Assembly: GCA_965637545.1 (NCBI GenBank)
Contig: OZ281501.1
Span: 2,976,001 to 3,040,000, forward strand
From: Phallusia mammillata
Lineage: Eukaryota
Direction of reading: 5' to 3'
Length of the DNA: 64,000 nt
Under the pieces are notes generated by a model, which saw only the letters and a program-made list of their open reading frames with translations, searched no databases and had not been told where the DNA came from. Position numbers and translations under genes: made by a program. Below are positions 3,132 through 22,612 of the stretch, in pieces (within the stretch, counting starts at the first letter, position 1; each line of letters starts with the position of its first letter).

Positions 3132-3611
3132 ATTGAACCAGTTTTATTTTATACCTAAGACCGAAACCGTATTTACTTACAAACTGTGTGCCAGAAGTAC
3201 TAAAGATGCAATCAATTTTTAAATGGTCACTTGTATTATTAAAATTGTTAACAACAACAACAACAAAGATAACAACAACTTGCAGACAGGAATTGTTGGA
3301 TGCCCTTAACAGTTTACAGTTTAGACTTTAAATATCAAAAATTGTACCGCTTTGTCTCGATGCCCGAGGCACATGCTTTGCCTAGCGGTTAATTCAGACG
3401 TGGTTCTAATTACATTAATACAAAGTTGGATATCCATCCTACGAACATGGGTTACTGGAACAGAATTGTTCAAATCAATGCAAAGATACTTTTGTTTCAT
3501 TTCGTATGAAAAAAAAATCTTGTCTACATTTTTTTAGTATTTATCATTATTTTTGATATAGTAGGCTACTGGTTCTAAATCATATCAATACAAAGTTGAA
3601 TGGAAACTTAC

Positions 3612-3760
3612 AAAACGGCGACATCATCGTTGCTTAATTGCTCGACAGGCAAGTTATTATCACCATTGGATTGTCGCCGTCGTCGTCGGCTCCATCCTGA
3701 ATTGACTTCAGTCACAAGCAGCACAGCACAAAGCAGCAACACAAATACAAGTTTGTTCAT
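3612..3760 (-). CDS. Secreted Arg-rich/acidic peptide precursor, copy A, coding exon 1 (downstream exons presumably left of the window)
   Basis: ATG at 3760 gives MNKLVFVLLLCAVLLVTEVNS-GWSRRRRRQSNGDNNLPVEQLSNDDVAV, then a phase-2 GTAAGT donor at 3611. Hydrophobic signal-peptide pattern. Homologous to 17727-17800 (+). Confidence 0.75.
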
Positions 3761-4924
3761 GACTTCTCTCTAAAGTTTCACTGCAATCTGTAACGTTTCG
3801 ATTTTAGCCTATTAATTTAGACTAGAATGTCTATTTCAAGTGTAAACTGGCGTTACAAATTGAATTGTAATTTTGTGTTAACAAAGATTAGGTCTTTTAG
3901 TTTATGCTTAGTTAAGAGCGATTGCACTTACGCTTATGAATCTTTGTGTGCTAATTATAACATATATGACATGACGACATGGGCAAAATTACTGATTATC
4001 CCATTGTACCTAGTACAAGGCTTAAACATTGCGCTCGACAAACTGTTAGTCTAGGTTTTGCGGTCTCAATGCAACCAATTCCAACCCTATACGCAAAACT
4101 TCTGTTCTGACACAGCTAAGCCGGGCGGTATTATACATCTCTTCCTCTTGCACCATGTTACTAAAGTTACTAGAAAAAAGCATACATCATTCGTTTCCTA
4201 ACGCATCGTTTAAGTTTGTTTAACAACTGCAAGACCGAACGTTCATGTCGCAATCCAAGAGAACCGAGTCGTGTACAAAGGAACATGACATTCTGCGTTT
4301 TGACAAAACATTTGCATATTGAAATTTGATCAGGTTTCAAAGAAAAGGAAACCAGCGTGAGTCTGTGTTGAAAACACACCATGTTGGATTCCGCATCAAT
4401 GATTTTAATCTAAGGTTTTACTACAACCATCACAACTGAGGCGAAGTTTCGTTTGTAGAAGTTCGACGCAATTTATAAAGTTGCTTAAAGAAAGTTTACT
4501 TTTCGTGAAAGAACAGTTACAGTGAGAGTGGTAAACGGGCCCGAACTAAGACCCTGAACCCGGCCCGAGCCCAAAAACACAAGCCCAAAACCCGGCCCGA
4601 ACCTGAATCGTTTTCGAGAAGCCCGTTGAGTAACCTTTGCTGCCAGAGGCCAGGGCAAACCTGACGACTGTAAGCTCTTACGTTGCGTTATTATAGCTCC
4701 ACTGAATACTAGGGATCGGATAGATATGCAAATGTTCTGTTTGGTCGAACACCGAACTTGTGCCTTTACAAATAATCCCAATTCTACGTTAGTTTTGTAG
4801 CTTTCCAAGGTCCCCTACGTCACCAGCGTTGTATTAATATGTACAGGCCTCAGAAGTACGGGGTTTCCACCAATTGACTTCACACTCGGCCACATTTCTG
4901 TTGTATTTAAAACTTGGTACACAA

Positions 4925-6635
4925 ACACGTGGTGGTGAAATAGGATGCAGGCGTTTTTCCGTTATTTTTTTGCCACAACTGCAGAGAGAAATAGTGTTTT
5001 TGTTGGATATTTTAGATACTTAATATAGTATTTCCTCAAAACATTCATAACAAACTTACGTCTCACTTAGTATGCCCACTTTTTTTTACTTTTTAAGTGG
5101 TAGTTTTTCACCCTAATTCCGCATTGGTTCGCAAAAATGCCTGTGCCTTTGAAACCATGAAGCAATTACGCACTCATATGCACTCATTTAGAGAGAGAAA
5201 GAGAAATGAAGGAGACGTTGGTGGTGCTAAGAAAACTAGATTTATCCAAGCCCGTCTACACCATATTTTTCTCCAAGTATAAAATAGTGCGACAGATCTG
5301 CTTTATTTTCATTCTCCCACGAATGAGAAAACTTCCTAAGGATGAGGGCGTTTTTCCGCCTTGGATCTTAATTAGCTACGGAGAGATATAGCCAGTTGAA
5401 ACCAATTTTGGCTTGTCATAAAATATGACGAAGTTAATATGGAGGTTCTGTTACATACCAAACATTTCATGAAATTCTAATTTGCATTATACCTTTAAGA
5501 CCTTAACGTTCCAACACAACTACTTTTATTTGCACAATGAACTTAAACAACAAATTACTGTAACTGTTTACTATTGTGTTTAGCCTATTACTTTTATTAT
5601 TTTAAGGTGGCGTCACAGTGTTTGTGAAAGAGAAAATGTTCTTTGTTGAAAATTTGAAATTTTGATTTGTGGTAAAGTAACTTAACTTAGTACATTTAAA
5701 ACAAACCTTGTTTCTTTGTTTGTTTACACTTGTTTTGTAAGTATTAAGTTATATTCAATATTTTGCATTTTAATTCTTACTTGTCAAATTATGATTAAGC
5801 AACTTTTTAAGTGTTAATTGCGATTTCTGGCAAAATGGTATCAAAATAATGTATTTTGAGTATTTTAATCGGTTTGACACAAAAAAGTCACGTTAAAATC
5901 ATTCTTTATCTATCAAACATGTATTTGCTTATACTTTGCAGCAGTGGGGACTTTCTGAGAATGGAAAACGGTAAGAAACTCGGTAAAATGTAGACTAGTT
6001 AAAGAAACCAGAAAACACTGTTACAAAAAATGTAAAACAATTTATTACAAATCCTGTGACAAAACGCCAAATTGTCCAACTTTCAAGATGCAATAGACTT
6101 GCAGAAACCAAGTGATCTTCGGGAAAGCGAAAATGACCCAAAATAAATCTAAGGTAAAGTTAATGATTGTTTTTTGACATCTCTAATCAATTTACAGTTG
6201 AGTTTAATTGCTTTTCGGTAGGATTTGGAAGGCAATATGATTATCTGAGATAATACAATTTAAAGTATTTTTAGTAAATTGTGCGGTTTATTGGTGTTGT
6301 ACCTAAGAAATGTTTGGTGTTGTACCTGACTTAACAAATTAAGGAATTTTTTATGGGTTTGTAATTCGCACTTGTAAATAGAAGGCCCAATGCCTAGAAT
6401 ATATTCCGCGTATGTTTGTGTCCAATTTGCTACCTTAAACAGTTAGATGCTTGCAGTCAATGCGTTTTTCACCACTTTGCACAATAGTAAACTATTTTAG
6501 TGGCACCATAACGTTGGTGGTGGAATAGGATGTAGGCACTTTTTCGAATTTTATTTGAAAGCTGCGGAGAGAAGAAGCTGGTGGAATTTTATCCTAATCC
6601 GCCTTCTTCGCAAAAATGCTTGTGCCTTTGAAACA
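4925..6635. repeat. Inner direct repeat pair (4925-4990 plus 5098-5155 vs 6510-6635)
   Basis: ACGT(T)GGTGGTG(A/G)AATAGGATG(C/T)AGGC and TTCGCAAAAATGC(C/T)TGTGCCTTTGAAAC are each present twice in the same orientation. Confidence 0.8.
5166..6146 (+). pseudogene. Peptide precursor copy B: intact exons 2-3, decayed exon 1 homolog
   Basis: Exon 5942/5945-5970 (SGDFLRMEN) and exon 6088-6146 (DAIDLQKPSDLRESENDPK*) have canonical splice sites and the same phases as copy C. Region 5166-5297 aligns to 17564-17745 but carries a frameshift, a TAG and a deletion of the Arg tract. No signal-peptide exon found. Confidence 0.55.
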
Positions 6636-7263
6636 TTCGTGTTCGGGTGGGGCTTGGCTCAGGCCTGACTCTACACTCTGTGTCGATATTTTTTCAAATA
6701 AATGTACCTAGCTAAGTAGCCAGTTTCAGAACGTCAAACAGCCATAAAACGCCTTGTTCGAAACCGATATTATGTTTGTTGTCTTAGTCTTTGCGAAGGC
6801 TTTATTGTATAGGCCTGTCAATCAAATTTTCGGGCCTAAACGGGTTTTTCAAAAACGATTCGGGTTCGGACCGGGTTTCGGCCTTGAACTTTCGGGTTCG
6901 GGGTCTAATTTCAGGTACGTTTACCCTTCTAACAGCATCAGTAAATTGACTGTAACTCCTCCACGAAAAGGAAAATTTCCAAGAACTTTATTCAATTGCG
7001 TCGAACTGGCTTCAGAAAATCAAATTTAGATTTAAATCGTTGATGCGCAATCCAACATGGTGTTTTTCAACAGAGACTCAAGGTGGTCCCTTTTCTTTGA
7101 AACCTGATCAAATTTCAACATGCAAATGTTTTGTCAAAACGCAGGATGTCATGTTCTTTTGCAAACGGCTCGTTTTTTTTGGATTGCGACATGAACGTTC
7201 GGTCTTGCCGTTGTTAATGGAACTTAAACGATGCATTAGGAAATGAATGATTGATACATTTTT

Positions 7264-7972
7264 CATTTTAAAGGTATGAATGTAGAGAACAACATTTGTA
7301 AATTTCATGGAGTAGCGATTAAGTTTAGGGCCAGCGCACAATGAATATTGTTTGGGTGGAATTTTATCGGTTTTGGGATGTCGGTTATGAATTTTCGATA
7401 GTGTATTCGTGCTGACTCCCTGTTGCTAGAAGCTCGAGTGATGGCTCATTTTAAAGGTATGAATGTAGAGAACAACATTTGTAAATTTCATGGAGTAGCG
7501 ATTAAGTTTAGGGCCAGCGCACATCGCATACTTTTTGGGTTGATTTCGGACATTATTTATGAATTATCAATCGCAAATTTGGTACAGTTAACTTGTTGCT
7601 AGAAGCTCGAGTGACGGCTCATTTTAAAGGTATGAATGTAGAGAACAACATTTGTAGATTTCATGAAGTAGCGATTAAGTTTAGGGCCAGCGCACATTGA
7701 ATATTGTTTGGGTGGAATTTTATCGGTTTTGGGATGTCGGTTATGAATTTTCGATAGTGTATTCGTGCTGACTCCCTATTGCTATAAGCTCGTGTGATGG
7801 CTCATTTTAAAGGTATGAATGTAGAGAACAACATTTGTAAATTTCATGGAGTAGCGATTAAGTTTAGGGCCAGCGCACAATGAATATTGTTTGGGTGGAA
7901 TTTTATCGGTTTTGGATGTCGGTTATGAATTTTCGACAGTGTATTCGTGCTGACTCCCTGTTGCTAGAAGCT
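7264..7972. repeat. Tandem satellite, four units of 183/173/183/~170 bp (A-B-A-A)
   Basis: CATTTTAAAGGTATGAATGTAGAGAACAAC starts at 7264, 7447, 7620 and 7803. Unit 2 has a different middle segment. Confidence 0.95.
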
Positions 7973-8884
7973 ATTTTAGCAAAATAATTTTATTTTAAGT
8001 GCATGTACTAGCGGCCGTGACGTAAAAAAAACTTTGATGTTACATTTTGGATGACAAGAGTGTTCATCTCAATCTGCGAAACAAGCTTGAAATTAAATTG
8101 GCTATCACGCAGGCACCATTAGAAAGAGTTTACGACGCGGCCGTCAATGCAAAAAGGTTGTGTACGCCTGTGTTAGGCCCAGGAGATTCAGCACACCAAA
8201 GTGTATAAACGTAAGAAGTTAATTTAATGGCTAGCTTGTTGCTGCATTCTTTCAGCAATTTTGATATAATGTGGTCTTGACTTGTTCTTAAAAGCCCCCC
8301 TTATTAAAATACCTCCCTATATCAATTAATTTTTATTTATTTGAGGTGATCTCAAAAAGATCGAAAAATCTTTATCCGTACCTATAGATATTAATGACAT
8401 TTTTCGCAATCCTTTACTCCAGGAATATTAAAAGCAAAATCTCTCCAGGTATGTGCTTATTGCTTCAAGTCACATTACTGACGCAACAGTCCCAAACTGA
8501 TGGTGATGGGACGAGTACTCGGTATCGGTGGTATTAAACGATTTTAGTGGTATCGATACTCGTACTCGGTGTCGAAATATTTTATCTTAGTTTTCGTTAC
8601 CAACGTTCGATACCCAAGGCCGATTTACACCATAAGAATACGGGCAACTTTTTGCCAATAGTTACTTCGAACAGCACAAAATCGGGAAAAAGTTCCGCCA
8701 GGTTACCTATATTTTTTTCGCTATCATGTGGAGAATACCTGCATTTCATAAAAACGCAATAGTGACCTTTAGTAACACTGATCTCAGCTGTATTCCCTTC
8801 GTATACCTTTCTTCAGTTGTATACCCTAATTTTGATGCGGTATACACTTGTGTATACAGTATACCCGGTTGAAGAGCACTGCCC

Positions 8885-8918
8885 TAAAGGACCGCGGACC
8901 CCAGTTTGGGAACCACTG
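8885..8918. mobile_element. Solo end of the hAT MITE family seen at 47147
   Basis: TAAAGGACCGCGGACCCCAGTTTGGGAACCACTG is the near-perfect reverse complement of the first 34 bp of the 47147 element. Confidence 0.7.
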
Positions 8919-9501
8919 GTGTAATAAGTGTTCTTCTGTACTTCTGCTAATGCTTTTGTGTGTGTGATAATAATTTGTTCGAATTAAAACTTAAACCTGA
9001 TAAGACTCAAGCATTTTTTTCTTTTTTTCAACAATGTGTCTTCCTTTTTGTGGATAGAAATGTGGTAAGCCTTATGGCTAAGCAGGGTTTTAACAAGTAA
9101 AATCTGAGAAAACATTAGGGTCACTTAGCACTGTAGACTCTGAACAGACGACCTGCAAGACTGAGCCACACTAAGGGGTTTGTCACGTTGAAACACACCC
9201 CACCCTTTCCTATTTAAATTACACTTCCCAATCATGTTGTGATAACCCACAGCGACAACAGCGGCAACATCCACAATGTCGTACACGATTAGTGTAAGCT
9301 GTAGCGAAACAGGCTCAAAGATTTAAAGGGTTTTCCAAACAAGAAAACGAAAAACTTTGTCATACGTCAACGCTCAAAAAACACCAATGACCCACCGAAC
9401 AACTTAACAACGTAAACGCGAAATTGATGAACTTAACATTTTCAATGTTATAACAAATGCCGCATTCCTAAAATATAATATATTTATTTTTTGGTAACTT
9501 T

Positions 9502-12004
9502 ATGACAATTCGGATCCAAAGACTGAAAACACTCGACAAGTCGATGACGTCACTGGTAAGTGGTAAACACCTCTGACGTAGAGCGGCGTGTACCCCATCA
9601 TGAGTAACGGATACAAACAGTTTCAAACTCGTTACCAGTATGATAGTGATTTAAAGAGTTGCCTGTCCAGCAAGGCAAACATTACAAGGATTATAATACT
9701 GGGAGTTATTATACTAAACAGTATCAGACCCTCCAACAGACAGCATGGTCATTGACGATTACTCTTAAAACAGCTGAGAAAGAAAAGCATTTTCCAAGTA
9801 ACATAATCAGTCAATGATTGTTCAAGGAAAATATATATTTCGGCTAACTGGCATCTTCAGTTCTACGTACAATCATTCACTGGTACTGTTGCTTGGAGAA
9901 TATTTTCCATTCCCAACGATTATATTTATATTACACTTACCATGTGCAAATGTGTAATGTTAGGTTTATTAAAATATTGAAATTCAAGTTTTTGGTAATT
10001 GTTTGGTTTTGATGGAAGGTTCTCACCACAATTTACCTTCTGTAAGTATAAGCCTGATTCGAATATGTTTACGTAACAAGCTATCAAATATAAGTACGTG
10101 TTATATAAAAACTCAGTACCCAGGAATTGTACTTAAAACTTTATGTCGTTTTTATAACAGTTGGATCAAATTATCAGTCGTTTTTGTAACAGTTGGATCA
10201 AATTATCAGTCGTTTTTATAACAGTTGGATCAAATTATCAATCAAAAAAATTAAAAAACGACATGTAATGCAAGCAAATATAACTGGTTTTGTGAAACGT
10301 CAAAAGCTTAAACCGAGCAATTTTCACTGTATTTGTTAATTAACTGCTTCCCTAAATCTTCAAAGGGGAAACTCGTAATTGTAGGGGATGAAGGAACAGG
10401 AAAAACGTGTCTTTTGATGCGTGAGATGTGTGATAAATTTCCCACAGATTTTCTCCCCAGCGCTTGCAGCCAATGTTACCGCGTGAAGAAAGTGAATGGA
10501 AAAGATATTAAATTACATCTTTGGGACACCTGTGGTGGTAAAGAATATCACAGGTAAACAAAAAACAGTTGCTATAGCACCGCATTTGACGACTTTCTAA
10601 ATAAGTCACGATGTAAATTCACCAAAAACATCCAATAAAAGCATTTTCTTTTTAACTTTATTCCCAAATTTTATCGACTATTTCACGTACTATTTGTCTA
10701 TATTAAGATTTTTCCACGATTATGGATTCTTGTTTACTCTAGTCTATTCGATCTGTTTGAAGCCGAAATTAGTACCGAATTCCAACATAAGATTTACATT
10801 TACATTTTTAAGGGGGTCACAGGTCCTACAGGGTTACTTGAACGACGCGCAAAAGTTACTTTTCGGGGGGCACGGCCCACGAAAGGTTTAGTACCACTGG
10901 TTTAAATAATGGTCGTATATCAGTGTTTCAAACCTATAATGGTTTTTCGTGCGTATATGACAACATTTAAAGTAATATTTAGACGTGACTGTTAAGACGC
11001 CTGCTATACAGTTAATGAAACCCCTGACGCATAGTTTAAAAGTCCAAAAAGGCAAAAACAGAAACATATATTCTCATCGCACACTAACACTCTGACAGTT
11101 TTGGTGTTGATCGTGCAATGAACTGTAGGTATTTGTAAATTTGCAGACAATTATATTTCATAAAATTCTTTATGCATGAAAATTCCTTATGTTAATGTAC
11201 ATATATCCACATACGACAGGCGTTCGTCCAGTTTCTCTACTAAGTTTTTCTGACAGGTTAAGACCTTTAGCTTACCCACAAACCGACGTATTTTGCATTT
11301 GTTTTGACGTTACTTCGAAAGCCTCGTTTGAAAATGTTAAGTCTGAATGGGTAAAAGAAGTGTATCATCATTGCCCGGGCGTTCCAGTTCTCTTAGTCGG
11401 TTGCAAGATTGACCTGAGAACAAATGAAGAGAAAATAAAGGAAATAAATGAAAAAAACCTTCAGTTTATCACGTAAGTTTGTGTTTCGTATTTAAATAAT
11501 CAACTTAACTCAACAATGGAACCTGTTTGCAAATACTTATGTTAAAAACAAATAAACTATTTTGGTACATACGTTTAAAAATAAATCATTTGATTTCTAT
11601 GTGAATTTTCAGTATGGAACAAGGCCACGAGATGGCAGCAGAGATAGGGGCTGTAAGGTAGAGCTACTAACACTGAGCTTCACCTTTGGCTCGACCTGGG
11701 AACTTCTGGTAGGTGGCCCAAAAGAGCATAGGCGTTTACGGTGCTGACTCAGCAATTATTCTTACCATAAACCCAAATTGCTGTAACAGCACCATAAACG
11801 CCTATGCTCTTTTGCGCCACCTACCAGAAGTTCCCAGGTTGAGCCAAAGGTGAAGCTCAGTGTTAGTAGCTCTACCGGGCTGCAAAGTACATGGAATGCT
11901 CAGCGCTGACTGGCCAAGGAGTTGATCACGTGTTTCAGACCTTGGCGGAACTCGCCATGAAAAAAATAAATGGAAGCAAAAAACAAGGAGATTCTGTACT
12001 TTGA
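9502..12004 (+). CDS. Atypical RhoA-like small GTPase, paralog 1 (MITE in last exon; functional status uncertain)
   Basis: Exons 9502-9555, 10366-10553, 11257-11472 and 11613-11652 + 11888-12004. Motifs KLVIVGDEGTGKT, WDTCGG, RLRPLAYPQTDV, GCKID, YMECSAL. Exon 2 and 3 lengths (188, 216 nt) are identical to paralog 2. The first exon is the least certain. Confidence 0.8.
10145..10240. repeat. 32-bp minisatellite, 3 copies
   Basis: GTCGTTTTT(A/G)TAACAGTTGGATCAAATTATCA repeated three times. Confidence 0.9.
11657..11876. mobile_element. Mutator-like MITE (220 bp) inserted in Rho paralog 1 exon 4
   Basis: ~90-bp near-perfect TIRs (GGTAGAGCTACTAACAC...GTGTTAGTAGCTCTACC). 9-bp TSD GGGCTGTAA (11648-11656) / GGGCTGCAA (11877-11885). 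The empty site is seen in paralog 2. Confidence 0.92.
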
Positions 12005-12139
12005 AGTGAAGTTGTTGAAAATTCGTTGCATTTAGATTGTGGAGTTTAATGTTTTTAGTGATGAACATATTTATTTTTCTTTGATGATGTCGTAAACGTT
12101 TTGTTATTTTTGCTCTTCAAAAAAAAAGTTTGCAAAATA

Positions 12140-12552
12140 CCGTATTTGCTCGATTGTAAGCCGCCCTCGTTTATAAGCCGCCCTCGATTGTAAGCCGCAT
12201 GTTGAGGTGTTAAAAAAATAATGTAAGCCGCCCTCGATTGTAAGCCGCACGCTGGAATTTTAGATACGATTGTTTCCTAATACACCTTTCTGTAGTTATA
12301 TGGTATGACTATTTGCCCATATCTGTTAGTTACGTTGATAACTGTACCCGACAGAGCGTATATCGACGTATAATCTGTACACGCATACATGTATTGAACC
12401 CAAAATACGTTAAAAAGTTGAAGTGTAGAAATTATATCGGTATAAAATTAAAATATAAGCCGCCCTCGATTGTAAGCCTCCCTCGATTATAAGCCGCACA
12501 AACGACAGCTAAAAAACAATATAAGCCGCGGCTTACAATCGAGCAAATACGG
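12140..12552. mobile_element. Tc1/pogo-type MITE, copy 1
   Basis: TIRs CCGTATTTGCTCGATTGTAAGCCGC / GCGGCTTACAATCGAGCAAATACGG, TA on both flanks, internal TAAGCCGCCCTCGAT repeats. Second copy at 23027. Confidence 0.9.
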
Positions 12553-12902
12553 TAAACGTCGAGGAGCCTAAAAATAACTTGAGCAGTCAACCGTACACTT
12601 ATTTCCCTTTTTTCTTACCTACGGCGTATGACGTCACACGTCACCTTGTAAACAACGCCGGCGCTTCATCGGTTTGCTTTGTGAGTAACGGCCGCGTACA
12701 GTTGTCTAACTTTTCTTTTTGAAATGGTCTTTGGATCAACTCTGTTTGACCAGCAGCCAAAAGTTTGTGTGGACAGTTTAAAAGTTAAATGTGACTTTGA
12801 TACATATTGGACTGCAATGTGGAATTAGAAAATCAAGTGTAGCTTCTACAACTTAAACAGCAGGACAGAAGTGTACAAAAAGTTGCAGCCTCAGTACTTG
12901 AA

Positions 12903-15900
12903 ATGGCAGATCAAAACAAGTCTTCGTCACAACTGGTAAGTATGCGCAAAACGTTGTTTCTTACACAGTGCCGTTACATTATGTCTTAATAAGCCAATAG
13001 TATTTATGTTTGAGGTCATACATACTAGCATTCATACCACTGATCTCTATAAACACTGGATTGCGTTACTCCGTTGAACGGTTGGGTGATTTTTGAAGCA
13101 AATTGAAGCGTAATGGCGGCTGAAAAGGAAGCCCCAAAAATGCATTGCGGGCAATGGGGAGAGAGTGGAAAATAGACGATAATTTTTAATTTTAGGCATT
13201 TGTGTAGCGATTTTTGCAGATATGATTTGTAGATTAATAGGACGCATGTATTACGGGTGTATGTAAATACCACTTGACCGCTGTGGCCAGCCCGTGGCCA
13301 GCCTGTACACACTTTCTAAATGCCGTGGCCAACCTGTAAATACTGCGTGACCGCTGTGGCCAACCTGTAAATACTGCGTGACCGCTGTGACCATTTTTTA
13401 ACACAAGCGTTGACGGTTAGTGCTAGTGGGGTTAGGGTGAGGGTTTGTATTGGAAATAACACTTCAATCGGGTCTCATTTACCTATACAGGTTGACCACA
13501 GCGGTCACGCGGTATTGGGAATACATTATTCAGTTGAAATAAATCATTATTAAGTGGTAATAAATGTTTTATTGTGCAATATAAGTAGTTTACATGCATT
13601 TATTAATATTTAAGACACAAATCCAACAAGAATGGCTATTTTCTGCTGTTCTTGATTGTCAGCAAAGTCTTAGAGCTAAAATATGGCTGTTTAAAAGTTT
13701 TTTTGTAGTAGGTTCAACATTATTTTGCTTCTATGTTACAAACCATAAATCTAGTAAGCTTACAATTAGCTCATTTAATCTACCTTTTTCAGTTTGCAAC
13801 CAACATGTGTTGAATAAATTTTTTCTAATGTTGTGAATTCTCAAACTACAAACTCTTAACAAAATTCTAATATCTCAAAGAGATACATGTTCATATAAAT
13901 GCATTTAAGACATCATAGCAGTTAGGGTGGACAAGTTTAACTACCCAAATGAGTTGCCTATTTATGTACTATTTCAGTCAGAATCATGAAATATTGTTTT
14001 TATTCTACCTAATAAGCAATTTTCTGCAAAAACACACCTGCACACCAGTTATCACCAACACTTAAATTCGTGCTAAATAGGACTGAAGGCAACAAATACA
14101 CCAGACAAGTTCATACAGATATCCTGTATTTTTTGTCAGATGATCACCATTGTAACAGATGGTGCATTCACAAAATAAAAAAAAAACTCAAAGTTGTTTA
14201 AGTTTAAAATGTGCAGCATATCATGTTACAGGCAGTGTCAGAAATGATTACAAAACATACACAGTGGAAGTAGAACAGTATACACACAAAAAATATTTAA
14301 TCTGATTCCAACCCCTCTGTAGTGTATTTGTTGTCGAAAAAGGCTGAATTGTAATCTTGCAGTGTCATAAAGCTTGAGGGTTTGGGAGGAGACTGAAACA
14401 TTCCAGTGGAATTTTACCAGAGACAATAAAGGTTGCTTATTGGAGAAATATAAACCCTATTATGTCTGAAATGTTTGGAAACAAATTTATCATAAATGTA
14501 AAATGGAATTGCAAAACTTCATAATATCACCATGGCAAGATAATAAAGACCCAAACCAAATGCACTCAATCGAGAGAAAAAAGTCAAATAGTGTTAAAAT
14601 ATTAGTTTAGTTTTTGTGATTTTAATTAAAACGTTATTCCACATGTTGGTCAGAATTTCCTGAAGTTTGATAACAGTCAAAAACAGCAGTTTGGATTAGC
14701 ACAAGGTAATGTCACACAAAGAATTACATCATCTTGTGTGAAGGAAGTAGCCATCTTGTTGAATTCATGTCTAAAATACTTAAAAAAGCACAAAAACTAC
14801 TTATATTGCACAATAAAACATTTATTTCCACTTAGTAATGATTTATTTCAACACTAACTTAATAACGTATATCCAGTACACCTACACTAATACACATCAC
14901 AATCAATCTACGCATATTTATTGGTTATTACACACTGTAATACATGCGTCCTATTAATCTACAAATCATATCTGCAAAAATCGCTATACAAATGCCTAAA
15001 ACAAAAATTATCGTCATTTTTCCACTCTCTTCCCATTGCCCGCAATGCATTTTTGGGGCTTCCTTTTCAGCCGCCATTACGCTTCAATTTGCTTCAACCG
15101 TGACGGCCAGTAGCGCAATCCAGGGTTTATAGAGATCAGTGATTCATACTCACTTGAAGCACAGTTTTTGGGTAGAGCTACTAACACCATACGTTTCTCC
15201 TGATCCAAAAGTGCTTAATTTTCGACAGGTGGCGCAAAGAGCACTTTTTTCATTTAAAACGGTATATCTCAAAAAATGCTAACGGTTAGGGCTATTAGGG
15301 TTGGGGTAAGGTATTAGCACTTAAAATTCAATAAAACTAACCCAAAAAATTAGTTACTAATGTAAAAATATTTCCCAGCCCAACCCATTTATAGCCGCTA
15401 AATAAATAATTCAGCTCTTTACGCCACCTATCGAAAATTAAGCACTTTTGGATCAGGAGAAACGTATGGTGTTAATAGCTCTACCCAGTTTTTGGGTGTG
15501 GTCATAAAAGGTCACGTGGTACATTGTTTACATAAAAATCAAGTAATATTTGACATTTTATTAACATTGGTAATTACGTCGCACTTTTTACCGTCAGCTC
15601 TACAACGTGGTTTATACTTTACAGCACAAATTAGTTATTGTTGGAGATGGCGCAAGTGGAAAAACATGTTTACTTATACGTCGCGCTGTTGATAAGTTTC
15701 CTGAAGATTATGTGCCCACTGTATTTGAACAACATGTCTACAAGGAAAATATAAACGGACAAACTATTCAATTATCTGCATTTGACACGGGTGGGGGTGA
15801 AGATTATCACGTGTAAGAAGACGTGTTTGTTTAACTGCCCAGTGAACAAACTTGTTTCTAAGCGGTCAAGGGACATTGTTCACTTTTACATTTATATTGA

Positions 15901-16636
15901 AACAGTGCTTTCACATTGTAACGTATGAATTATTTGTAAAGTCGTGCATAGAATTGCTATAGTATGTCCGCGTTTGCAAAGTATGTAAGTACATTCTAAT
16001 CTTTTATTAAGACATATAGAATAAGTAAAAAACTATTGCAGCTAGACACACCGAAATAACTATTATTGCTCTTTTTGGGAGTTTCTTATTTTATGCCACT
16101 TAACTTTATATACAACCGTTTAAAGTGTGTCAACAAACTATTTGCTATAGGTTTGGCAATTGATATTCGGATCTTCTTTTTACAGATTGAGACCTTTGTG
16201 TTACCCAGAGACTGATGTATTTTGTTTGTGTTTTGACGTTGCTTGGCAAACTTCATTCGAAAATATCAAATCTGCTTGGATTGAAGAATTATCTCATCAT
16301 TGTCCTGATGTTCCAGTTCTCTTAGTCGGTTGCAAGATTGACCTGAGAACAAATGAAGAGAAAATAAAGGAAATGAAAGAAAAGAACCTTCAGTTTATCA
16401 CGTACGTCTGTGGTTGATGTTAAAGTAAGAAGTGAAGCACGTGTTATTAACAAATAAATATTTTTAGCGAGAAACAAGGCCACGAGATGTCAGCAGAGAT
16501 AGGCGCTGCAAAGTATGTGGAATGCTCAGCGCTGACTGGTCAAGGAGTTGATCACGTGTTTCAGAACTTGGCGGAATTGGCCAGGAAATATTTTATTGAA
16601 ACCAAAAACAAGAAGAAAAAATGTGTACTAATATAA
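12903..16636 (+). CDS. Atypical RhoA-like small GTPase, paralog 2 (201 aa, intact)
   Basis: Exons 12903-12935 (MADQNKSSSQL), 15625-15812, 16186-16401 and 16468-16636; phases consistent, 606 nt total. Motifs GDGASGKT, YVPTVFE, FDTGGG, GCKID, ECSAL, and a polybasic plus CaaX end (KNKKKKCVLI*). Confidence 0.9.
13038..15141. mobile_element. 2.1-kb non-autonomous DNA transposon with ~220-bp TIRs (hAT- or P-like by TSD length)
   Basis: CACTGATCTCTATAAAC / GTTTATAGAGATCAGTG termini; inverted match 13038-13255 with ~14936-15141 and ~13525-13590 with ~14795-14860. Perfect 8-bp TSD ATTCATAC (13030-13037, 15142-15149). No intact transposase. Confidence 0.88.
13266..13516. mobile_element. Small MITE nested in the 2.1-kb element, with internal 31-bp tandem repeat
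   Basis: Imperfect TIR AATACCACTTGACCGCTGTGG / CCACAGCGGTCACGCGGTATT. It interrupts the left arm of the host IR. TSD not resolved. Confidence 0.6.
15171..15485. mobile_element. Mutator-like MITE (315 bp) in Rho paralog 2 intron 1
   Basis: ~70-bp TIRs beginning GGTAGAGCTACTAACAC (same termini as the 11657 element). Perfect 9-bp TSD CAGTTTTTG (15162-15170, 15486-15494). Confidence 0.93.
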
Positions 16637-18429
16637 TTTCCAAAACTCTCTGACACTTTTAGTAGTTGAAAATATAATCGATGTAGATAGTTTCATGCAC
16701 ACGACATGATTTTTCTAAACAGCATACGGAGTGGACTTTTGACCTCATTATCCTGCAATAATCCTAATCATCAAAATTGACTGCAAACAGAAATGAGAGG
16801 AGCTGTACTTTACCGTTTTTTTTGTAAAAATGCGGATGCATTTAGATCAGCGGTTCTCAACCAGTGGGCCATGGTTTGAATTAATCTATTTACGGAATAA
16901 AGTTACTTTGGGTTTCTGCAACTCCGTATGTTTATCATGTAATAAACTACTTTGTGATTACAATAAACCTAAATAGCAGCATATCCATTGTCCAATTACT
17001 CGGTCATAACTGAAAGTGATTGATTAAAGAATGGAAAGTGCTGTTTTATGATTTTTTTTAATATTGCAATTTCTTAGGGCGGGTCTGTTAAATACAAAAC
17101 ACGTCAAAAAACTGTTTTGCTTTGTATCTCTGCTTGTTTGAAACTTGCATTGTTTAAGACCTATTACGTTTAAACGCAAACCAATTTTATGAATTTAAAC
17201 TGCACGTGGTAACTCAACTTATTTCGTATACTGCATTTGCAAACGCATGACTGAAAAACGGAATTAAACGGCATTTTACGCCCAAAGACATCTGACACTA
17301 GGCCCAAACCATTAAAAAACAATTTGCTAATGCATAAGTTATTTTATCTTTATATAATTTCAAGGTGACATCACGGGAATTGTAAAAGAGATAAGGTTCT
17401 TTGTTGGAATATTAGACACCTATTAAAGAAAGTTTACTTAAAACATTCAAAATAAACATATCGCTTTCTACTTTTCTTATTTGTTCACATTTTAGGTAAT
17501 GATTTTTCAGCCTAAATACGATTTTGTTCGTAAAAATGCAGATTTCTTTAAAAATAGTAGTAACTACGAACGCATATTCGTTTTGAAAGAGAAAAAGAGA
17601 CATAAAAGGAGAAAAGAGAGAAAGGAGGAGTGAGAAAGAGAAATGTTGGAGGTGGCAACGGAAACAAGCGTCATCCAAACCCATCTAAAAATACACCGTT
17701 GTGTCCTTCAAGTATGAAATATTGCGAGACGACGACGCCGAACAGATCATGATAATAACTTGCCTGTCGAGCAATCGAGCAACGATGCTGTCGCTGTTTT
17801 GCAAGTTTCCATTCAACTTTGTATTGATAAAATTCAGAACCTGGGCTATATCAATCATTAGATAAAGTAAGCACATGTCTTTGATAGCAAATTGGGCCGC
17901 CTACAGTTTCTGTGACAATGCAACGCATCAAGTTTTGTGTAAATAAACAAGTCGCAACAGTTAATTCGCTCTTAAATCCGCTCGGTTTTGGGGTAGCTGT
18001 CAAAAAGATGGACTGCTATAACCAGGGTTGTCGTCGACATGGACCCCAAAAAGGGACAACCAAAAAATAAAATTTTCATACGAAATGCAACAAACGTCTT
18101 CGAACAATCTTTTGCATTGGTAGAAAAAATCTGTTTCTGTTTCAGTAATCCTTGTTTGTAGAATGAATATCCAACTTTGTATTAATGTAATTTAAAACCA
18201 GGTCTGAATTAAAAACATGTGCCTAGGGCAGGGGTTCCCAACTGGGGGGACTCGCACCCCTTGGGGCTACGAGATTCAACATCAAGGGGTACGAAGATCG
18301 TTGGGCAAAAAGCAGCTTTTCAAACAGATTTCACAGCACACTTTTATTTTGGAATTGTAAACTTATTGTGCGATTACGGTCTTTGCTTTGAAAAAAAAAC
18401 TACCTACAAATAAATTGTTGTTATTTAGT

Positions 18430-21342
18430 TTTTTTTATTATTATAGTTTCCCACGCTCTTGGGCGCATTGGGCAGCAAGATTGTTCCACTTTTTTCTGTC
18501 TTTTGCAATTTCCTCTATCTCCTTTATGTTTAACCCTCTCATTTCTAGATCTTTGCGGAAAGTCTCCCTCCAGGTAAGCTTTGGTCTACCTCTTTTTCTT
18601 TTCCCTTGCGGTGTCCAGCTCATAGCGATTTTTGGAGCCCGTTCGTCTGACATGCGTAACACATGCCCTGCAAGTCTAAATCTCCGCGTCGACATGATGG
18701 TGCATAAAGGCTTGGTACCACTAATTTGGTACACCTCATCATTTGTAATGTGGTCCTTGTATGTGATATTTAGGATCCTTCGAAGACAACGCTGATGGAA
18801 AGCGTTTATGTGCTTTTTCAGCTTGACTGTCATTTTCCAGGTTTCACTGGCATATAGAACGGTGGGCATTACAATTGACTGGTACAGTTTGATCTTTACC
18901 AGTTTCGAAACCTTCGAGCTTGACCAAACTGTTTTGAGCCTTCTGAAGGCCGAAGCAGCTTTTCCGATGCGGGCATTTATGTCGGCCTCCACATCAGCAT
19001 CTGTTGTGAACACACTGCCAAGATAGGTAAAGCTTGTGATGTTGTTAATAGGCTCAATTCCATTGATGGTTAAATGTACGTTGGACTGAGTTTCCCCTCC
19101 AACTCGAAGTAACTTAGTCTTGTCGCTGTTGATCGTCAGACCGGCTGTTGCTGCATTTTTGGCCAATGAGTTGGTCATTTCTTGAAGATCTGTCATCGAC
19201 TCTGCGAGCAAGGCGATGTCATCTGCAAAGTCGAGATCCGTAAGACGCTTGTGGTTTGTCCATGAGATGCCGAACTTTGGATAATTCATTGCCTTTCTCA
19301 TCACATAGTCGATAGTGGTAATGAATAGTAGGGGTGATAAGACACAGCCTTGGCGCACACCTGTGTTGATTCTAAAGAACTCTGTGTTTCCTGACTGAAC
19401 TTTTACGCAGCAGCTTGATCCTTCGTAGATGTTTTTGAAGGTATCTATAAACCTGAGTGGAACACCGTATTTTTGTAACACCTGCCATACAGTGTTGCGA
19501 TGCACACTATCAAATGCCTTCCTGAAGTCAATGAAGTTGACAAACAGGGGTTTCTGAAATGCAAGGCACTGCTCCACAATGTTTCTGAGAACAAAGATCT
19601 GGTCACAGCACGACCTGTTGTATCGAAAGCCTGCCTGTTCTTCTCTCAACTTCTCATCTAAGGATGTCTTTAATCTGTGCAGAAGCACGCAGCAGAACAC
19701 TTTCCCTGGAACAGATAGCAGTGTGATTCCTCGCCAATTACCACAAATGCCTAGATTTCCCTTTTTTGGAAGTTTCACAATTACTCCTTTTTTCCAATCA
19801 GATGGTACAGTCTGCATTTTCCAACATAAGTTGCATAGCTTTGTCAACTGTGCAATCAGTGCATTCCCTCCATTTTTTAGCATCTCAGCAGAAATTTGGT
19901 CGAGACCTGCAGCTTTGTTGTTTTTGAGTTTTTTCAGTGCACTGGAAATTTCTTCTGTTGTGATGTCACCCATATCTACTTCCATCGTTGGTCCATCTTC
20001 ATCTTCAAAAGTAGGCAGTTCGTAAGGTTCTGGTTGGTTCAGAATTTCCTTAAAGTGTTCGTACCATCGCATGTTTTGTTCTTCCTCGGTTAGAAGAGTT
20101 TTTCCAGTTTTGTCCTTAATTGGTACACCGGAGCTTTTTCCTGTCTTTGTCAGATGCCTAATTATTCCAAATAGCGCTCTAGTGTCATTTCTGTTCATTG
20201 CTTTCTGTGCGTCCGCACATAGCGTTTCAGTCCAAAACTTTTTGTCGTCTCTACAACTCTTTTTAACAACTTTGTGTGCTTGTTCGTACTGTTTGTCTAT
20301 CTTCCAGTATTCATCAGAAGATTTGGCGCTTTCCCTTTGATGTTTAATCTTTCTTCTCTGATCAATCAGTGCCCATGTTTGTGGTCGAATCCAGCTTTCC
20401 CTTCTCGTCCCGCGCCTTCTGCCGAGGGTTTGATCTGCAGCTGTTGTCACTATTTTTTGAAATTGTTTCCATTGCTCTTCAATATTATCTTTTACTTGTA
20501 CAGCCTGGAATCTTGTGCTCAAATTTTTGTGAAACATTTTTACTATTTTTTGATCTTTTAGTTTTATAAGGTCGTATGGTTTTGTTCCACTGTGTTTGAT
20601 AATTTTTTTCAGTTTTAGTTTCAGTGACCCTTTGACGAGGTAGTGATCGGAGGCTACGTCTGCACCTCTGCAGCTACGTACATCCTGCAGTGCGCTGCGC
20701 CATCTTCTGCATATGCAAATGTAGTCAATTTCACTTGTTGTTTTGCCGTTTGGGGATTTCCAGGTTTGCTTGTGTATTCGTTTGTGATTAAAAAAAGTGT
20801 TCCCTATACATAACTCGTTTGTACTGCAGATGGTAAGAAGTCTGTGCCCGTTGTTGTTAGTTTTGCTTGCTACACCGAATGGTCCTAAGATGTCACTCCA
20901 ACCAGCTCTGTTTCCATCAATCTGTGCGTTAAAATCGCCCATTAATAATTGTAGATCATGTTTAGGGATACCATTTAATGTATCCTGGAGCTGGTCATAA
21001 AACAAATCCTTTTCTGACTCTTCTGCCTCTTCTGTAGGGGCATACACCTGAACAATAGATGTTTTCCCATGGCGCGAGTGAAAACGTGCAGTAATTATTC
21101 GATCACTGATTGGTTTCCATCCAACCAATGCCTGATTTGCTTCATGGTCCAGCACGAACCCAACACCATGTATATGCTGTTTGTTGTGTCCCGAAAAGAC
21201 AACTGTCTTTCCCTCGCTAGTCAGTTTGCCACTTCCAATCCATCTCATTTCACTAACACCGAGAATATTTAATCCGTAGGTGTGAAACTCGCGCAATACT
21301 TGCGCCAATTTTCCACATTGGAACAAAGTTCTTACATTCCAG
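18430..21342 (-). mobile_element. RTE-clade non-LTR retrotransposon, 5'-truncated, young
   Basis: Perfect 13-bp TSD GTTGTTATTTAGT (18417-18429, 21343-21355). The 3' end is (TAA)n-A8 immediately after the ORF stop. The 5' junction falls at the TWNVRT motif that opens the APE endonuclease. Confidence 0.95.
18441..21341 (-). CDS. APE endonuclease + reverse transcriptase ORF (~965 codons, no ATG start)
   Basis: Uninterrupted frame with WNVRTL, SEMRW, MGDFNA, IDYIC, SDHY (APE); WRGITLL, EEQAGFR, FIDFRKAFDS, GVRQGCVLSPLLF, DFADD (RT); and an RTE-type C-terminus KRKRGRPKLTW. Confidence 0.95.
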   Translation of the reverse strand, partial: WNVRTLFQCGKLAQVLREFHTYGLNILGVSEMRWIGSGKLTSEGKTVVFSGHNKQHIHGVGFVLDHEANQALVGWKPISDRIITARFHSRHGKTSIVQVYAPTEEAEESEKDLFYDQLQDTLNGIPKHDLQLLMGDFNAQIDGNRAGWSDILGPFGVASKTNNNGHRLLTICSTNELCIGNTFFNHKRIHKQTWKSPNGKTTSEIDYICICRRWRSALQDVRSCRGADVASDHYLVKGSLKLKLKKIIKHSGTKPYDLIKLKDQKIVKMFHKNLSTRFQAVQVKDNIEEQWKQFQKIVTTAADQTLGRRRGTRRESWIRPQTWALIDQRRKIKHQRESAKSSDEYWKIDKQYEQAHKVVKKSCRDDKKFWTETLCADAQKAMNRNDTRALFGIIRHLTKTGKSSGVPIKDKTGKTLLTEEEQNMRWYEHFKEILNQPEPYELPTFEDEDGPTMEVDMGDITTEEISSALKKLKNNKAAGLDQISAEMLKNGGNALIAQLTKLCNLCWKMQTVPSDWKKGVIVKLPKKGNLGICGNWRGITLLSVPGKVFCCVLLHRLKTSLDEKLREEQAGFRYNRSCCDQIFVLRNIVEQCLAFQKPLFVNFIDFRKAFDSVHRNTVWQVLQKYGVPLRFIDTFKNIYEGSSCCVKVQSGNTEFFRINTGVRQGCVLSPLLFITTIDYVMRKAMNYPKFGISWTNHKRLTDLDFADDIALLAESMTDLQEMTNSLAKNAATAGLTINSDKTKLLRVGGETQSNVHLTINGIEPINNITSFTYLGSVFTTDADVEADINARIGKAASAFRRLKTVWSSSKVSKLVKIKLYQSIVMPTVLYASETWKMTVKLKKHINAFHQRCLRRILNITYKDHITNDEVYQISGTKPLCTIMSTRRFRLAGHVLRMSDERAPKIAMSWTPQGKRKRGRPKLTWRETFRKDLEMRGLNIKEIEEIAKDRKKWNNLAAQCAQERGKL

Positions 21343-21899
21343 GTTGTTATTTAGTACGAAGCTCATTGTCTCATAACAAGCTTTTTTCATGCTGCCAGCA
21401 ATAAACAACAAAGCACAAGCCACAAAGTTACGAAAAAAAATGCATAGATAAAGGAGGCATTCAATGTAGTCCTGCTGTAAATCTGCTACAAAAACTAGAG
21501 AAAATAGGGGAAGGCGGGGCAAAACGGACACCTTATTGTTTTTATATTAAAAGAACTGTCATGTCACTACCATTTTGTTTTGTGTAACAGTTAAAGTTAA
21601 ACTACTAAATGTGATGTAAAACTTGGAAACACTGCTGCTCTTTCTAAAAGTCTAGAATAGAAAAAATCTCAAACATGAGAGCCTAATTTTATTCTTTCAT
21701 AAAAGGTTTAATAAAATATTTTTACAAGTTTAAACCAGTTTCTATCAAGACAGCTTCTTTTTCTATCAAACCTTTTAGTGTAGTTAAATAATAAGCTTAT
21801 TAAGGCAAAATCCATCCGAATTTTTTGGGGGGTACGGAGAATGCTCTGACCCGACAAAGGGGTACGAGCAGCAAAAAAGGTTGGGAACCCCTGCATGGC

Positions 21900-22210
21900 C
21901 TAGGGCATCAAGGCAAACCGGTAAAAGTTTTGATATTTAAAGTCTAAACTGTTTAGGGCATCCAACAATTCTTGTCTGCAAGTTGTTGTTGTTATCTTTG
22001 TATTTTATTAATACAAGACAAAACAAGTGACCATTTAAGCATTGATTGCATCTTTGGTATTTCTGGCACAGAGTTGTTAATCAATCCTGTTTCGGGCTTA
22101 GGTATAAATAAAACGGGTTCAATTTGGGCCTTACTTTACACTTGGCCCCATTACGAGTGTAATTCGGATTATAAAGCAACAAAAGTTTGACTCAAATACC
22201 CTGTGTCTCG
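21900..22210. repeat. Inverted copy of the 1-784/3132-3340 intronic block (part of the A/C gene duplication)
   Basis: Reverse complement matches 3140-3375 and 686-780. Together with 17720-18228 (matching ~3375-3700) it defines the duplicated unit. Confidence 0.85.
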
Positions 22211-22612
22211 TCGTGAATACTTGAACCGGTTAAAAACGAAACAGGAACAATAACTTATTAACTAAAAATTTGCTTGTATACTTTGCAGAGAGGAATTTCT
22301 GACAATGAAAGACGAGCTCAGTAAGTTTTAGCTAATTAGAAAAACAAGAAAACCCTGGCAATTTGTTTTATACTAAAGCTACTATTAATGTTCGTGTCTT
22401 GTGCACCTAAGAAAACCCTGTTACATAAAACGTAAAAAACAATGTTGCACAAATTTTGTAAAAAAAACGTTATAAAAAACCTATGACAAAAAGCGAAAGT
22501 TAAAATTTTTTAGAAGCAATGGACTCGCTGGATACTAACGATTTTCGGGAAAGCGAAGCGGATACAAAATAAAGATCGGGTAAATATATAATTAGTTATT
22601 ATTCCCATATGA

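What the first reader, a model, noticed from the sequence alone, without database searches (positions are those of the whole stretch)
3612..22572. Hidden three-copy family of small secreted Arg-rich/acidic peptide genes (host-defence-peptide-like architecture)
Seen in sequence: three dispersed units share exon structure and sequence. A is on the minus strand (3760-3612), B on the plus strand (5166-6146) and C on the plus strand (17564-22572). Combining A exon 1 with the homologous C exons 2-3 gives a ~79-aa prototype: signal MNKLVFVLLLCAVLLVTEVNS | GWSRRRRR | QSNGDNNLPVEQLSNDDVAV-LEEFLTMKDEL-KAMDSLDTNDFRESEADTK. Splice phases (2, 1) agree between copies. The segment upstream of RRRRR differs sharply: only GWS in A, but a long K/R/G/P-rich stretch in B and C (C: ...GGVRKRNVGGGNGNKRHPNPSKNTPLCPSSMKYC). 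Established: ascidian styelin precursors have a signal peptide, a cationic mature peptide starting Gly-Trp, and a polyanionic C-terminal extension. Inference: a birth-and-death family of antimicrobial-type precursors, with A probably functional and B and C decaying. Alternatively RRRRR is only a convertase site that releases an acidic peptide. None of this is recoverable from the ORF track.
Basis: partly seen in the sequence, partly recalled or inferred. Interest (0 to 1): 0.82.

Follow-up and report, generated by a model that had tools for sequence, protein, structure and literature searches.

The report
Decaying sea-squirt secreted-peptide gene cluster
One tiny three-exon gene for a secreted peptide (export signal, five arginines, acidic tail) is still intact here among four broken copies; it is a small, mostly dead outpost of a large sea-squirt gene family whose Ciona relatives have already been published as antimicrobial-peptide precursors.

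Summary
Copy A has an intact first exon (3760-3612, minus). Its exons 2 and 3 lie 108-277 bases left of the window. Together they give a complete 72-codon, three-exon reading frame with phases 2 and 1, canonical splice sites and a poly(A) signal.

B has lost exon 1. C has lost promoter, start codon and signal peptide. Two further wrecks, D and E, lie left of the window. The 'K/R/G/P-rich stretch' of B and C is non-coding upstream DNA. In C it is out of frame with RRRRR and contains a stop.

A's ancestral promoter is degenerate and is separated from the start codon by about 620 bases of repeats. Whether A is expressed is therefore open.

The cluster belongs to a genome-wide superfamily of at least 50 loci: MNK-type signal, (G)W, Arg run, variable basic core, acidic tail. 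A profile search found relatives in Ciona, Clavelina, Styela and amphioxus. The Ciona branch was published in 2020 as a candidate antimicrobial-peptide family. This scan had already met larger clusters of the family elsewhere in this genome.

Verdict: a new member of a known kind, of modest interest.

The parts
3612..3760 (-). Copy A exon 1. It encodes the start codon, a 21-residue signal (predicted cut after VNS), GWS, five Arg and an acidic stretch, then a phase-2 donor TT|GTAAGT. Exons 2 and 3 lie outside the window at -108..-139 and -240..-277 (C8:2975892-2975861 and 2975760-2975723).
1..3611 (-). In-window part of A intron 1 (3719 nt in all). It is homologous to C intron 1, but is inflated by a transposon and by a tandem 427-nt duplication (1-201 = 428-629, 99% identical).
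782..3134 (.). 2.35-kb non-autonomous DNA transposon with 17-nt terminal inverted repeats, inserted in A intron 1. At least 8 copies elsewhere in the genome are 94-99% identical, so the insertion is recent.
3761..3790 (-). The last ~30 nt of the family's conserved 5' leader, directly before A's ATG. 22 of 22 bases match the intact paralog L013.
3791..4404 (.). Patch of dispersed repeats. It separates A's start codon from its ancestral promoter. The 685 nt from about 30 nt downstream of the TATA box to A's start codon (4445-3761, minus strand) hold 19 ATGs.
4405..4530 (-). Degenerate copy of the family promoter belonging to A. The motif is mutated (CTTTCACGAA...ACTTTC instead of CTCCCACGAA...ACTTCC). 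The TATA box CTTTATAAATTG is kept, and the start of the 5' leader follows.
4944..5345 (+). Copy B upstream unit with the only intact family promoter motif in the window (5317-5336). No TATA box, leader or exon 1 follows.
5942..5970 (+). Copy B exon 2 (29 nt). The frame is kept. A 6-nt insertion creates a new donor.
6088..6146 (+). Copy B exon 3 with stop codon and overlapping AATAAA. It is 93% identical to the intact paralog on contig C6.
17387..17726 (+). Copy C upstream homology, non-coding. It matches the far-upstream regions of B, D and E. It is joined directly to the RRRRR codons, so the promoter core, leader, ATG and signal are deleted.
17727..17800 (+). Copy C exon-1 remnant (RRRRR to the end of the exon). 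The donor is changed to TT|GCAAGT.
18230..21893 (-). Non-LTR retrotransposon inserted in C intron 1. It has an open 961-codon frame (18441-21326) with endonuclease and reverse-transcriptase domains.
22289..22320 (+). Copy C exon 2 (32 nt).
22514..22572 (+). Copy C exon 3 with stop codon and AATAAA. A's exon 3 is the same apart from an in-frame 21-nt deletion.

Best explanation
The stretch is a small, rearranged and mostly dead satellite cluster of a large ascidian family of three-exon prepropeptide genes. Members share an MNK-type secretion signal, then (G)W and an arginine run, then a variable basic core. A phase-2 intron, a 32-nt exon 2, a phase-1 intron and an acidic tail complete the plan.

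Five units lie within about 27 kb: D, E, A, B and C. Only A keeps a complete reading frame (72 codons). After the signal is removed, A's product would be a 51-residue propeptide. It starts GWS-RRRRR (+5) and continues in an acidic, probably helical tail (net charge about -4).

By analogy with its strongly basic paralogs and with the published Ciona relatives, the acidic tail is a pro-region that neutralises the basic part during storage and is cut off on release. The Arg run is at the same time an ideal furin-type site. In A the basic part has shrunk to a stub, so A is a 'short-core' member with little expected killing power.

Shown: the homology, the exon structure, the lesions of B, C, D and E, membership of the superfamily, and relatives outside the species. 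Inferred: secretion, processing, the neutralising role of the tail, and any defence role. Open: whether A is still transcribed. I put this at about even odds.
For: - Copy A. A exon 1 is open and has a GT donor. Its exons 2 and 3, found just left of the window, have canonical acceptors and donors, phases 2 and 1, a stop codon and an overlapping AATAAA.
- Lesions of the other copies. B has the promoter motif but no TATA box, leader or exon 1. C has its far-upstream DNA fused to RRRRR, a LINE in intron 1 and a GC donor. E has a deletion that removes most of the signal and the Arg run, a GC donor and a lost stop codon. D is an upstream fragment only.
- Close paralogs. One on C6 and six in tandem at C8:17.41 Mb are intact and have the same structure.
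- Superfamily. There are 71 exon-1 profile hits at E<=1, about 50 of them at E<=0.005, in clusters on seven contigs. The strongly basic members share the 32-nt exon 2 and phases 2 and 1. Their basic and acidic charges balance: +19/-17 and +20/-19. In A the figures are +7/-11.
- Conservation. The signal segment is the best conserved part, at 86-89% nucleotide identity against 50-78% in introns and 41-53% in the core. dN/dS among intact copies is 0.32-0.59.
- Relatives outside the species. The profile search of 1.84 billion proteins gave hits in Ciona, Clavelina, Styela and Branchiostoma at E 1.6e-6 to 4.8e-4. The Ciona hit's signal fits the published consensus of a 'novel LCAMP family', of which at least one member (KH.S921.1) is antimicrobial in vitro. 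Intron 1 is phase 2 in the Clavelina and Styela genes too.
Against: - There is no transcript evidence for A or for any paralog.
- No protein of the family from this species is in the protein collections.
- A's promoter motif is mutated, and about 620 nt of repeats with many ATGs precede the start codon.
- Exons 2 and 3 are no better conserved than intron 2. A polarised count gives no sign of constraint on A's exons: 12 exonic against 12 non-coding changes on A's branch.
- The outside hits rest on a short profile that is rich in signal peptide and low-complexity sequence.
- The amphioxus intron is phase 1, not phase 2.
- A's 8-residue basic stub is far shorter than any validated peptide of the family, and Arg-run peptides from Ciona were weak or inactive.
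Confidence: 0.75

Rival explanations
1. All five local copies, A included, are dead. A is a recently silenced pseudogene whose short reading frame has simply not yet been hit.
For: The family promoter motif of A is mutated, and a repeat patch with 19 ATGs cuts it off from the start codon. Intron 1 is inflated from a few hundred bases to 3.7 kb. Exon 3 has lost 7 codons. There is no excess conservation of A's exons over its non-coding DNA. The whole neighbourhood is a graveyard of copies.
Against: A has no lesion in 216 coding bases, four splice sites, the stop codon or the poly(A) signal, whereas each of E, B and C carries at least two lesions. A's signal segment is still 89% identical to the intact paralogs. 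A's terminal branch is about a third as long as C's. The repeats nearest the ATG are old (76-78% identical to other copies), so a frame dead since their insertion should have decayed.
Confidence: 0.4
2. A encodes a working host-defence peptide whose active part is the cationic N-terminus (GWSRRRRR or a little longer), built like a styelin.
For: The architecture is signal, Gly-Trp start, basic part, acidic tail. Basic paralogs start GWFG-RRRRR. The Ciona family relatives include peptides that are active in vitro.
Against: There are only 8 residues with one aromatic and no amphipathic helix. The Ciona Arg-run peptides KH.L63.9, KH.S1007.2 and KH.C1.365 showed weak or no activity. The whole propeptide is net acidic. 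No sequence link to styelins was found.
Confidence: 0.08
3. RRRRR is only a furin-type site, and the product that matters is the 43-residue acidic peptide released from short-core members (A, the Clavelina, Ciona and amphioxus look-alikes). It might be a signalling, chaperone-like or counter-ion peptide.
For: Short-core members with an Arg run followed directly by an acidic tail recur in Ciona, Clavelina and amphioxus. That suggests the type is kept and is not just a decayed AMP. R-x-R/K-R is the furin consensus (established knowledge).
Against: The acidic tails are poorly conserved between species and even between local paralogs. Exons 2 and 3 are no more conserved than intron 2. No receptor or activity is known.
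Confidence: 0.15
4. The units are fragments of a dispersed repeat and not genes at all.
For: The region is rich in transposons, and intron and flank are as conserved as exons 2 and 3.
Against: Only about 12 DNA-level copies exist, all in three places. Each intact copy has a TATA promoter, ATG, signal, conserved splice phases, stop codon and poly(A) signal. Annotated protein relatives exist in four other chordates.
Confidence: 0.03

Closest known systems
Ciona intestinalis 'novel LCAMP family' with the conserved 23-residue signal MNKSALLxLLxxGLxVLxExxxA (Ohtsuka & Inagaki 2020, PMC7387483; e.g. KH.S921.1)
   Same: It has an MNK-type conserved signal, a Cys-free basic region rich in Arg/Trp, and an acidic region that is short or present. 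It is multigenic and hypervariable behind a conserved signal. The profile of Phallusia first exons hits Ciona F6QS94, whose signal fits that consensus.
   Different: Copy A has only an 8-residue basic stub, not a 14-29-residue amphipathic helix. A's expression and activity are unknown. Homology rests on a short profile match (E 8.7e-5).
Styelins and clavanins of Styela clava; botryllin of Botryllus (PMC9966394)
   Same: They are prepropeptides with a signal, a cationic mature peptide and a C-terminal extension that is removed. They are made in blood cells, and furin is present in the granules. Styelins begin Gly-Trp/Gly-x-Phe (my recollection; not checked against a retrieved sequence).
   Different: No sequence similarity to A was detectable. 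A Styela protein (XP_077967195.1) carries the W-G-Arg5 module ahead of a styelin-like basic region, but a search from it did not retrieve styelins. Gene structure beyond the phase-2 first intron differs.
Ci-MAM-A / Ci-PAP-A precursors of Ciona
   Same: The order is the same: signal, cationic helix, anionic helical pro-region. The same charge-neutralising logic applies.
   Different: They have a different conserved signal (the MDRKIVFAL... type) and there is no Arg run directly behind the signal.
Engineered activatable cell-penetrating peptides (oligo-Arg masked by oligo-Glu through a cleavable linker). This is a functional analogy from my own knowledge.
   Same: An oligo-arginine segment is held next to a neutralising acidic segment in one chain.
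   Different: These are man-made. No evidence exists that the natural peptides enter cells or are unmasked by a protease.

Membership tests
Ascidian MNK-signal cationic/anionic prepropeptide family (Ciona 'novel LCAMP family', PMC7387483) | Conserved ~21-23-residue signal peptide beginning MNK | tested here: met
   A's signal aligns with the Phallusia paralogs and with Ciona F6QS94, Clavelina and Styela proteins. The profile search gave E 1.6e-6 to 4.8e-4 in 1.84 billion proteins. F6QS94 fits the published consensus.
Ascidian MNK-signal cationic/anionic prepropeptide family (Ciona 'novel LCAMP family', PMC7387483) | Cys-free cationic amphipathic helical segment long enough to act on membranes (tested peptides have 14-29 residues) | tested here: not met
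   A has GWS plus five Arg only, and then the sequence turns acidic. The paralogs at C8:5.3 and 7.4 Mb do meet it, with +19 to +20 over about 45 residues.
Ascidian MNK-signal cationic/anionic prepropeptide family (Ciona 'novel LCAMP family', PMC7387483) | Anionic region C-terminal to the basic part (short or absent in some members) | tested here: met
   Exon-1 tail plus exons 2-3 of A carry 11 Asp/Glu against 2 Lys/Arg.
Ascidian MNK-signal cationic/anionic prepropeptide family (Ciona 'novel LCAMP family', PMC7387483) | Transcription in haemocytes, and antimicrobial activity of the mature peptide | not testable with these tools
Phallusia three-exon superfamily (this genome) | Exon 1 ends in a phase-2 GTAAGT donor, exon 2 is 32 nt, intron 2 is phase 1, and an acidic exon 3 has AATAAA at the stop | tested here: met
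   A, L013, the six T copies and the basic genes L017 and L019 share it. L021 has lost intron 2.
Phallusia three-exon superfamily (this genome) | Promoter module CTCCCACGAA-N-ACTTCC plus a TATA box about 90 nt before the ATG (shown here for the A-type subfamily: L013, the T copies and E) | tested here: inconclusive
   It is present in E, L013 and the T copies. B has the motif but no TATA box. For A only a mutated copy exists, displaced about 640 nt upstream by repeats.
Styelins | About 32-residue Phe/Lys-rich mature peptide with the KHK motif directly behind the signal | tested here: not met
   A has no such region. The KHK motif is described in PMC9966394.
Styelins | Detectable sequence homology of the precursor | tested here: inconclusive
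   No styelin appeared in any search. The searches were limited by length window and word index, and no styelin sequence was available by reference for a direct comparison.

The most novel reading that the evidence does not exclude
Short-core members form a conserved class of their own in invertebrate chordates: a signal, (G)W, 4-8 arginines, then directly an acidic helix. Examples are copy A, Clavelina CAK8677874.1, Ciona F6QS94 and the tandem amphioxus units. On this reading they are natural 'masked oligo-arginine' peptides. The acidic tail keeps the arginine run inert until a protease separates the two. The freed oligo-Arg then binds polyanions or enters cells, or the freed acidic peptide acts on its own.
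Probability: 0.1. Interest if true: 0.6.

Novelty: new member of a known kind. Interest (0 to 1): 0.3.

Why it matters
The main value is for annotation and evolution. The locus shows how a fast-evolving family of secreted-peptide genes sheds copies by deletion of the 5' end, loss of exon 1 and transposon insertion. It fixes the true model of the one surviving frame. It also ties the unannotated Phallusia superfamily to a Ciona family with experimentally active members. The recurrence of 'short-core' forms (Arg run plus acidic tail) in Ciona, Clavelina and amphioxus is the only point that could grow into something of wider interest.

Tried and rejected
I did not try further, so read laying could not be used.
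- Word-index protein search. It found nothing with A exon 1 or with the ten-sequence alignment.
- Pfam. There was nothing above noise.
- ESM Atlas by features. The best score was 0.76, which is uninformative.
- Search from the Styela relative for styelins. It returned only the query itself and an unrelated abalone protein.
- dN/dS. Values of 0.3-0.6 rest on 45-70 codons, and pseudogene pairs give similar values, so this is not decisive.
- Polarised A-against-C substitution counts. The numbers are too few and the outgroup is ambiguous.
- Amphioxus intron phase as support for deep homology. The phase is 1, not 2.
- Reading the ~20-nt duplication that flanks the repeat patch upstream of A as a clean target-site duplication. 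The two copies differ too much to decide between insertion and recombination between copies.
- Joined model. The joined 72-residue model of A was neither searched nor folded. It has no reference, so it was examined exon by exon. Exons 2 and 3 (10-11 codons) were compared as DNA only.


Full report
**What is in the sequence.**
The window is AT-rich eukaryotic DNA (GC 0.31-0.42) with no N. It is G000:C8:2976001-3040000 of a 240-Mb assembly. Earlier notes of this scan call the organism the sea squirt Phallusia mammillata. I did not verify the species name.

On the minus strand, 3760-3612 reads as a start codon, a 21-residue hydrophobic signal ending VNS, then GWS, five Arg and an acidic stretch. 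It ends at TT|GTAAGT, a phase-2 donor.

**The rest of copy A.**
Self-comparison of the window extended by 20 kb to the left shows that A and C are co-linear through exon 1, intron 1, exon 2, intron 2 and exon 3.

- A's exon 2 (32 nt) lies at window -108..-139 and its exon 3 at -240..-277. These are C8:2975892-2975861 and 2975760-2975723.
- The acceptors are ...tttgcag and ...ttttttag. The second donor is G|GTAAGT.
- The split codons read Leu and Glu. Exon 2 encodes NDLLRMQDEL and exon 3 encodes AMDSLDTNDSK, followed by a stop codon that overlaps AATAAA.

Relative to C, A's exon 3 has an in-frame 21-nt deletion.

Intron 1 is 3719 nt. It contains a 2.35-kb element with 17-nt terminal inverted repeats and no reading frame, which has copies 94-99% identical elsewhere. 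It also contains a 427-nt tandem duplication. In the intact paralogs the same intron is about 130-190 nt.

**The other copies.**

- **C.** It keeps RRRRR to the end of exon 1 (17727-17800), exon 2 (22289-22320) and exon 3 (22514-22572). The sequence just before RRRRR is homologous to DNA that lies upstream of the promoter in copies B, D and E. Promoter core, leader, ATG and signal have therefore been deleted. The 'K/R/G/P-rich' reading is in another frame, contains a stop and ends in three stops. C's donor is GC, and intron 1 holds a LINE with an open 961-codon endonuclease/reverse-transcriptase frame.
- **B.** It has the family promoter motif at 5317-5336, the only exact match in the window. 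No TATA box, leader or exon 1 follows it. Its exons 2 and 3 (5942-5970 and 6088-6146) are still open.
- **E.** It lies left of the window on the minus strand. It has promoter, TATA box and ATG, but a deletion removes most of the signal and the Arg run. Its donor is GC and its stop codon is lost.
- **D.** It also lies left of the window and is an upstream fragment only.

A maximum-likelihood tree of the exon2-intron2-exon3 block groups (A,C) with support 100/99 and (E,B,L013) with 83/87.

**Is A alive?**

In favour:
- There is no lesion in the frame, the four splice sites, the stop codon or the poly(A) signal, while every neighbour has several.
- The signal segment is 89% identical to intact paralogs.
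- A's terminal branch is short.

Against:
- The conserved promoter module (CTCCCACGAA, ACTTCC, TATA) is found for A only as a mutated copy at about 4530-4465.
- Between its leader (to 4405) and the last 30 nt of leader before the ATG lie about 620 nt of dispersed repeats. The stretch from the old TATA box to the ATG holds 19 ATGs.
- Coding and non-coding divergence give no clear signal of constraint on A.

I put A's being expressed and translated at about even odds.

**The family.**
A translated search of the genome with A's exon 1, and then with a profile of ten first exons, finds 71 loci at E<=1. About 50 of them reach E<=0.005. They lie in clusters on C1, C2, C4, C5, C6, C7 and C8.

At the DNA level, exons 2-3 of the A type occur only here, once on C6 and six times in tandem at C8:17.41 Mb. 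Those seven are intact and have a TATA promoter.

Strongly basic members at C8:5.3 and 7.4 Mb begin GWFG-RRRRR or WG-RRRRRR and continue with about 45 Arg/Lys-rich residues. They have the same phase-2 donor, and those at C8:5.3 Mb also the 32-nt exon 2 (the 7.4-Mb gene L021 has lost intron 2). Their acidic tails are long, and basic and acidic charges balance: +19/-17 and +20/-19. In A the figures are +7/-11. This scaling, seen in only four lineages, fits a tail that neutralises the basic part.

Across intact copies the signal is the best conserved segment, the core is hypervariable with indels, and dN/dS is 0.32-0.59. Two earlier reports of this scan (s1-375376, s1-388444) describe larger clusters of the same kind elsewhere in this genome. 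My searches agree with them.

**Outside relatives and literature.**
Pfam, the word-index search and the Atlas gave nothing. The exhaustive profile search gave six hits at E 1.6e-6 to 4.8e-4:

- Ciona intestinalis F6QS94
- Clavelina lepadiformis CAK8677874.1
- Styela clava XP_077967195.1
- a Branchiostoma belcheri model that merges two tandem units
- two metagenome-derived proteins

All six have the hydrophobic signal, four of them starting MNK. In five the signal is followed by (G)W(G) and four to eight Arg; in the Clavelina protein the residue before the Arg run is Phe (FG-R6). The Ciona, Clavelina and amphioxus proteins are short-core forms with an acidic tail, like A. Intron 1 is phase 2 in the Clavelina and Styela genes but phase 1 in amphioxus.

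Ohtsuka and Inagaki (2020, PMC7387483) defined a 'novel LCAMP family' in Ciona by the signal consensus MNKSALLxLLxxGLxVLxExxxA, which F6QS94 fits. They showed that KH.S921.1 is antimicrobial in vitro. Arg-run segments such as KH.L63.9 and KH.S1007.2 had weak or no activity. The kind of gene is therefore known, but the Phallusia members are apparently unannotated. A direct sequence link to styelins could not be shown.

**Mechanism, with status.**

Shown:
- gene architecture
- family membership
- decay of four of the five copies

Inferred from established knowledge of secretory processing and from the Ciona work:
- signal cleavage after Ser21
- storage as a near-neutral propeptide in which the acidic helix masks the Arg run
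- cleavage at or after the Arg run by a furin-type enzyme

For A the basic product would be an 8-residue stub or less. A classical membrane-active role is therefore unlikely. A is either a degenerate member on its way out or a representative of the recurrent short-core type, whose function is unknown.

**Limits.**
- The joined model of A was not searched or folded, because it has no reference. It was treated exon by exon.

**Verdict.**
This is a new member of a known kind, already met by this scan on other DNA of the same genome, and of modest interest.

Noticed in passing
window 782-3134: A 2.35-kb non-autonomous DNA transposon with 17-nt terminal inverted repeats (AATGGGGTTGTTCATCC...). At least eight copies are 94-99% identical on C1, C3, C4 and C6, so the element was mobile very recently.
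   Followed up: partly
window 18441-21326 (-): A non-LTR retrotransposon with an uninterrupted 961-codon frame (endonuclease plus reverse transcriptase) sits in the intron of pseudogene C. It is possibly still competent.
   Followed up: partly
window 17793-17800 and L009 ~8096-8090: The two pseudogenes C and E fall in different clades of the tree, yet both carry the same GT-to-GC change in the first donor (TT|GCAAGT). A and all intact paralogs have GT. This is either a parallel change or gene conversion.
   Followed up: no
L023+L024 (C8:17408341-17424617): Six intact A-type genes lie in tandem as two alternating subtypes (core RRRRRGRT or RRRFRHF). Between subtypes the non-coding DNA is 95-98% identical, but the exon-1 core and tail are only about 82% identical. 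Either the mature-peptide part diverges faster than its surroundings, or the genes are mosaics.
   Followed up: partly
E (L009 ~8320-8270), L013:1385-1430, T copies, window 5317-5336: A conserved promoter module of the subfamily: CTCCCACGAA, 7-9 nt, ACTTCC (ETS-like core on the other strand), then a TATA box about 90 nt before the ATG. Its transcription factor is unknown.
   Followed up: no
window 203-425 versus C8:2972982-2973202: A 220-nt piece of A's intron 1 is 98% identical to a piece of E's intron 1. That is far closer than the rest of the two copies, which suggests recent gene conversion or a shared young insertion.
   Followed up: no
window 22600-22700 and L009 ~6260-6640: Copies of a GC-rich MITE-like element (…CCGCGGCCCGCGGGCC…CCGGCCCGCC…) sit right after C's exon 3 and between D and E.
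   Followed up: no
L026 (Styela clava OZ123514.1:16178073-16179699): The Styela relative XP_077967195.1 places W-G-Arg5-G-R-R-G in front of a GWF...FYKRHK...IH basic segment. From memory this segment resembles styelin C, followed by a long acidic tail. It may be a bridge between this family and styelins. This was not verified against a retrieved styelin sequence.
   Followed up: partly
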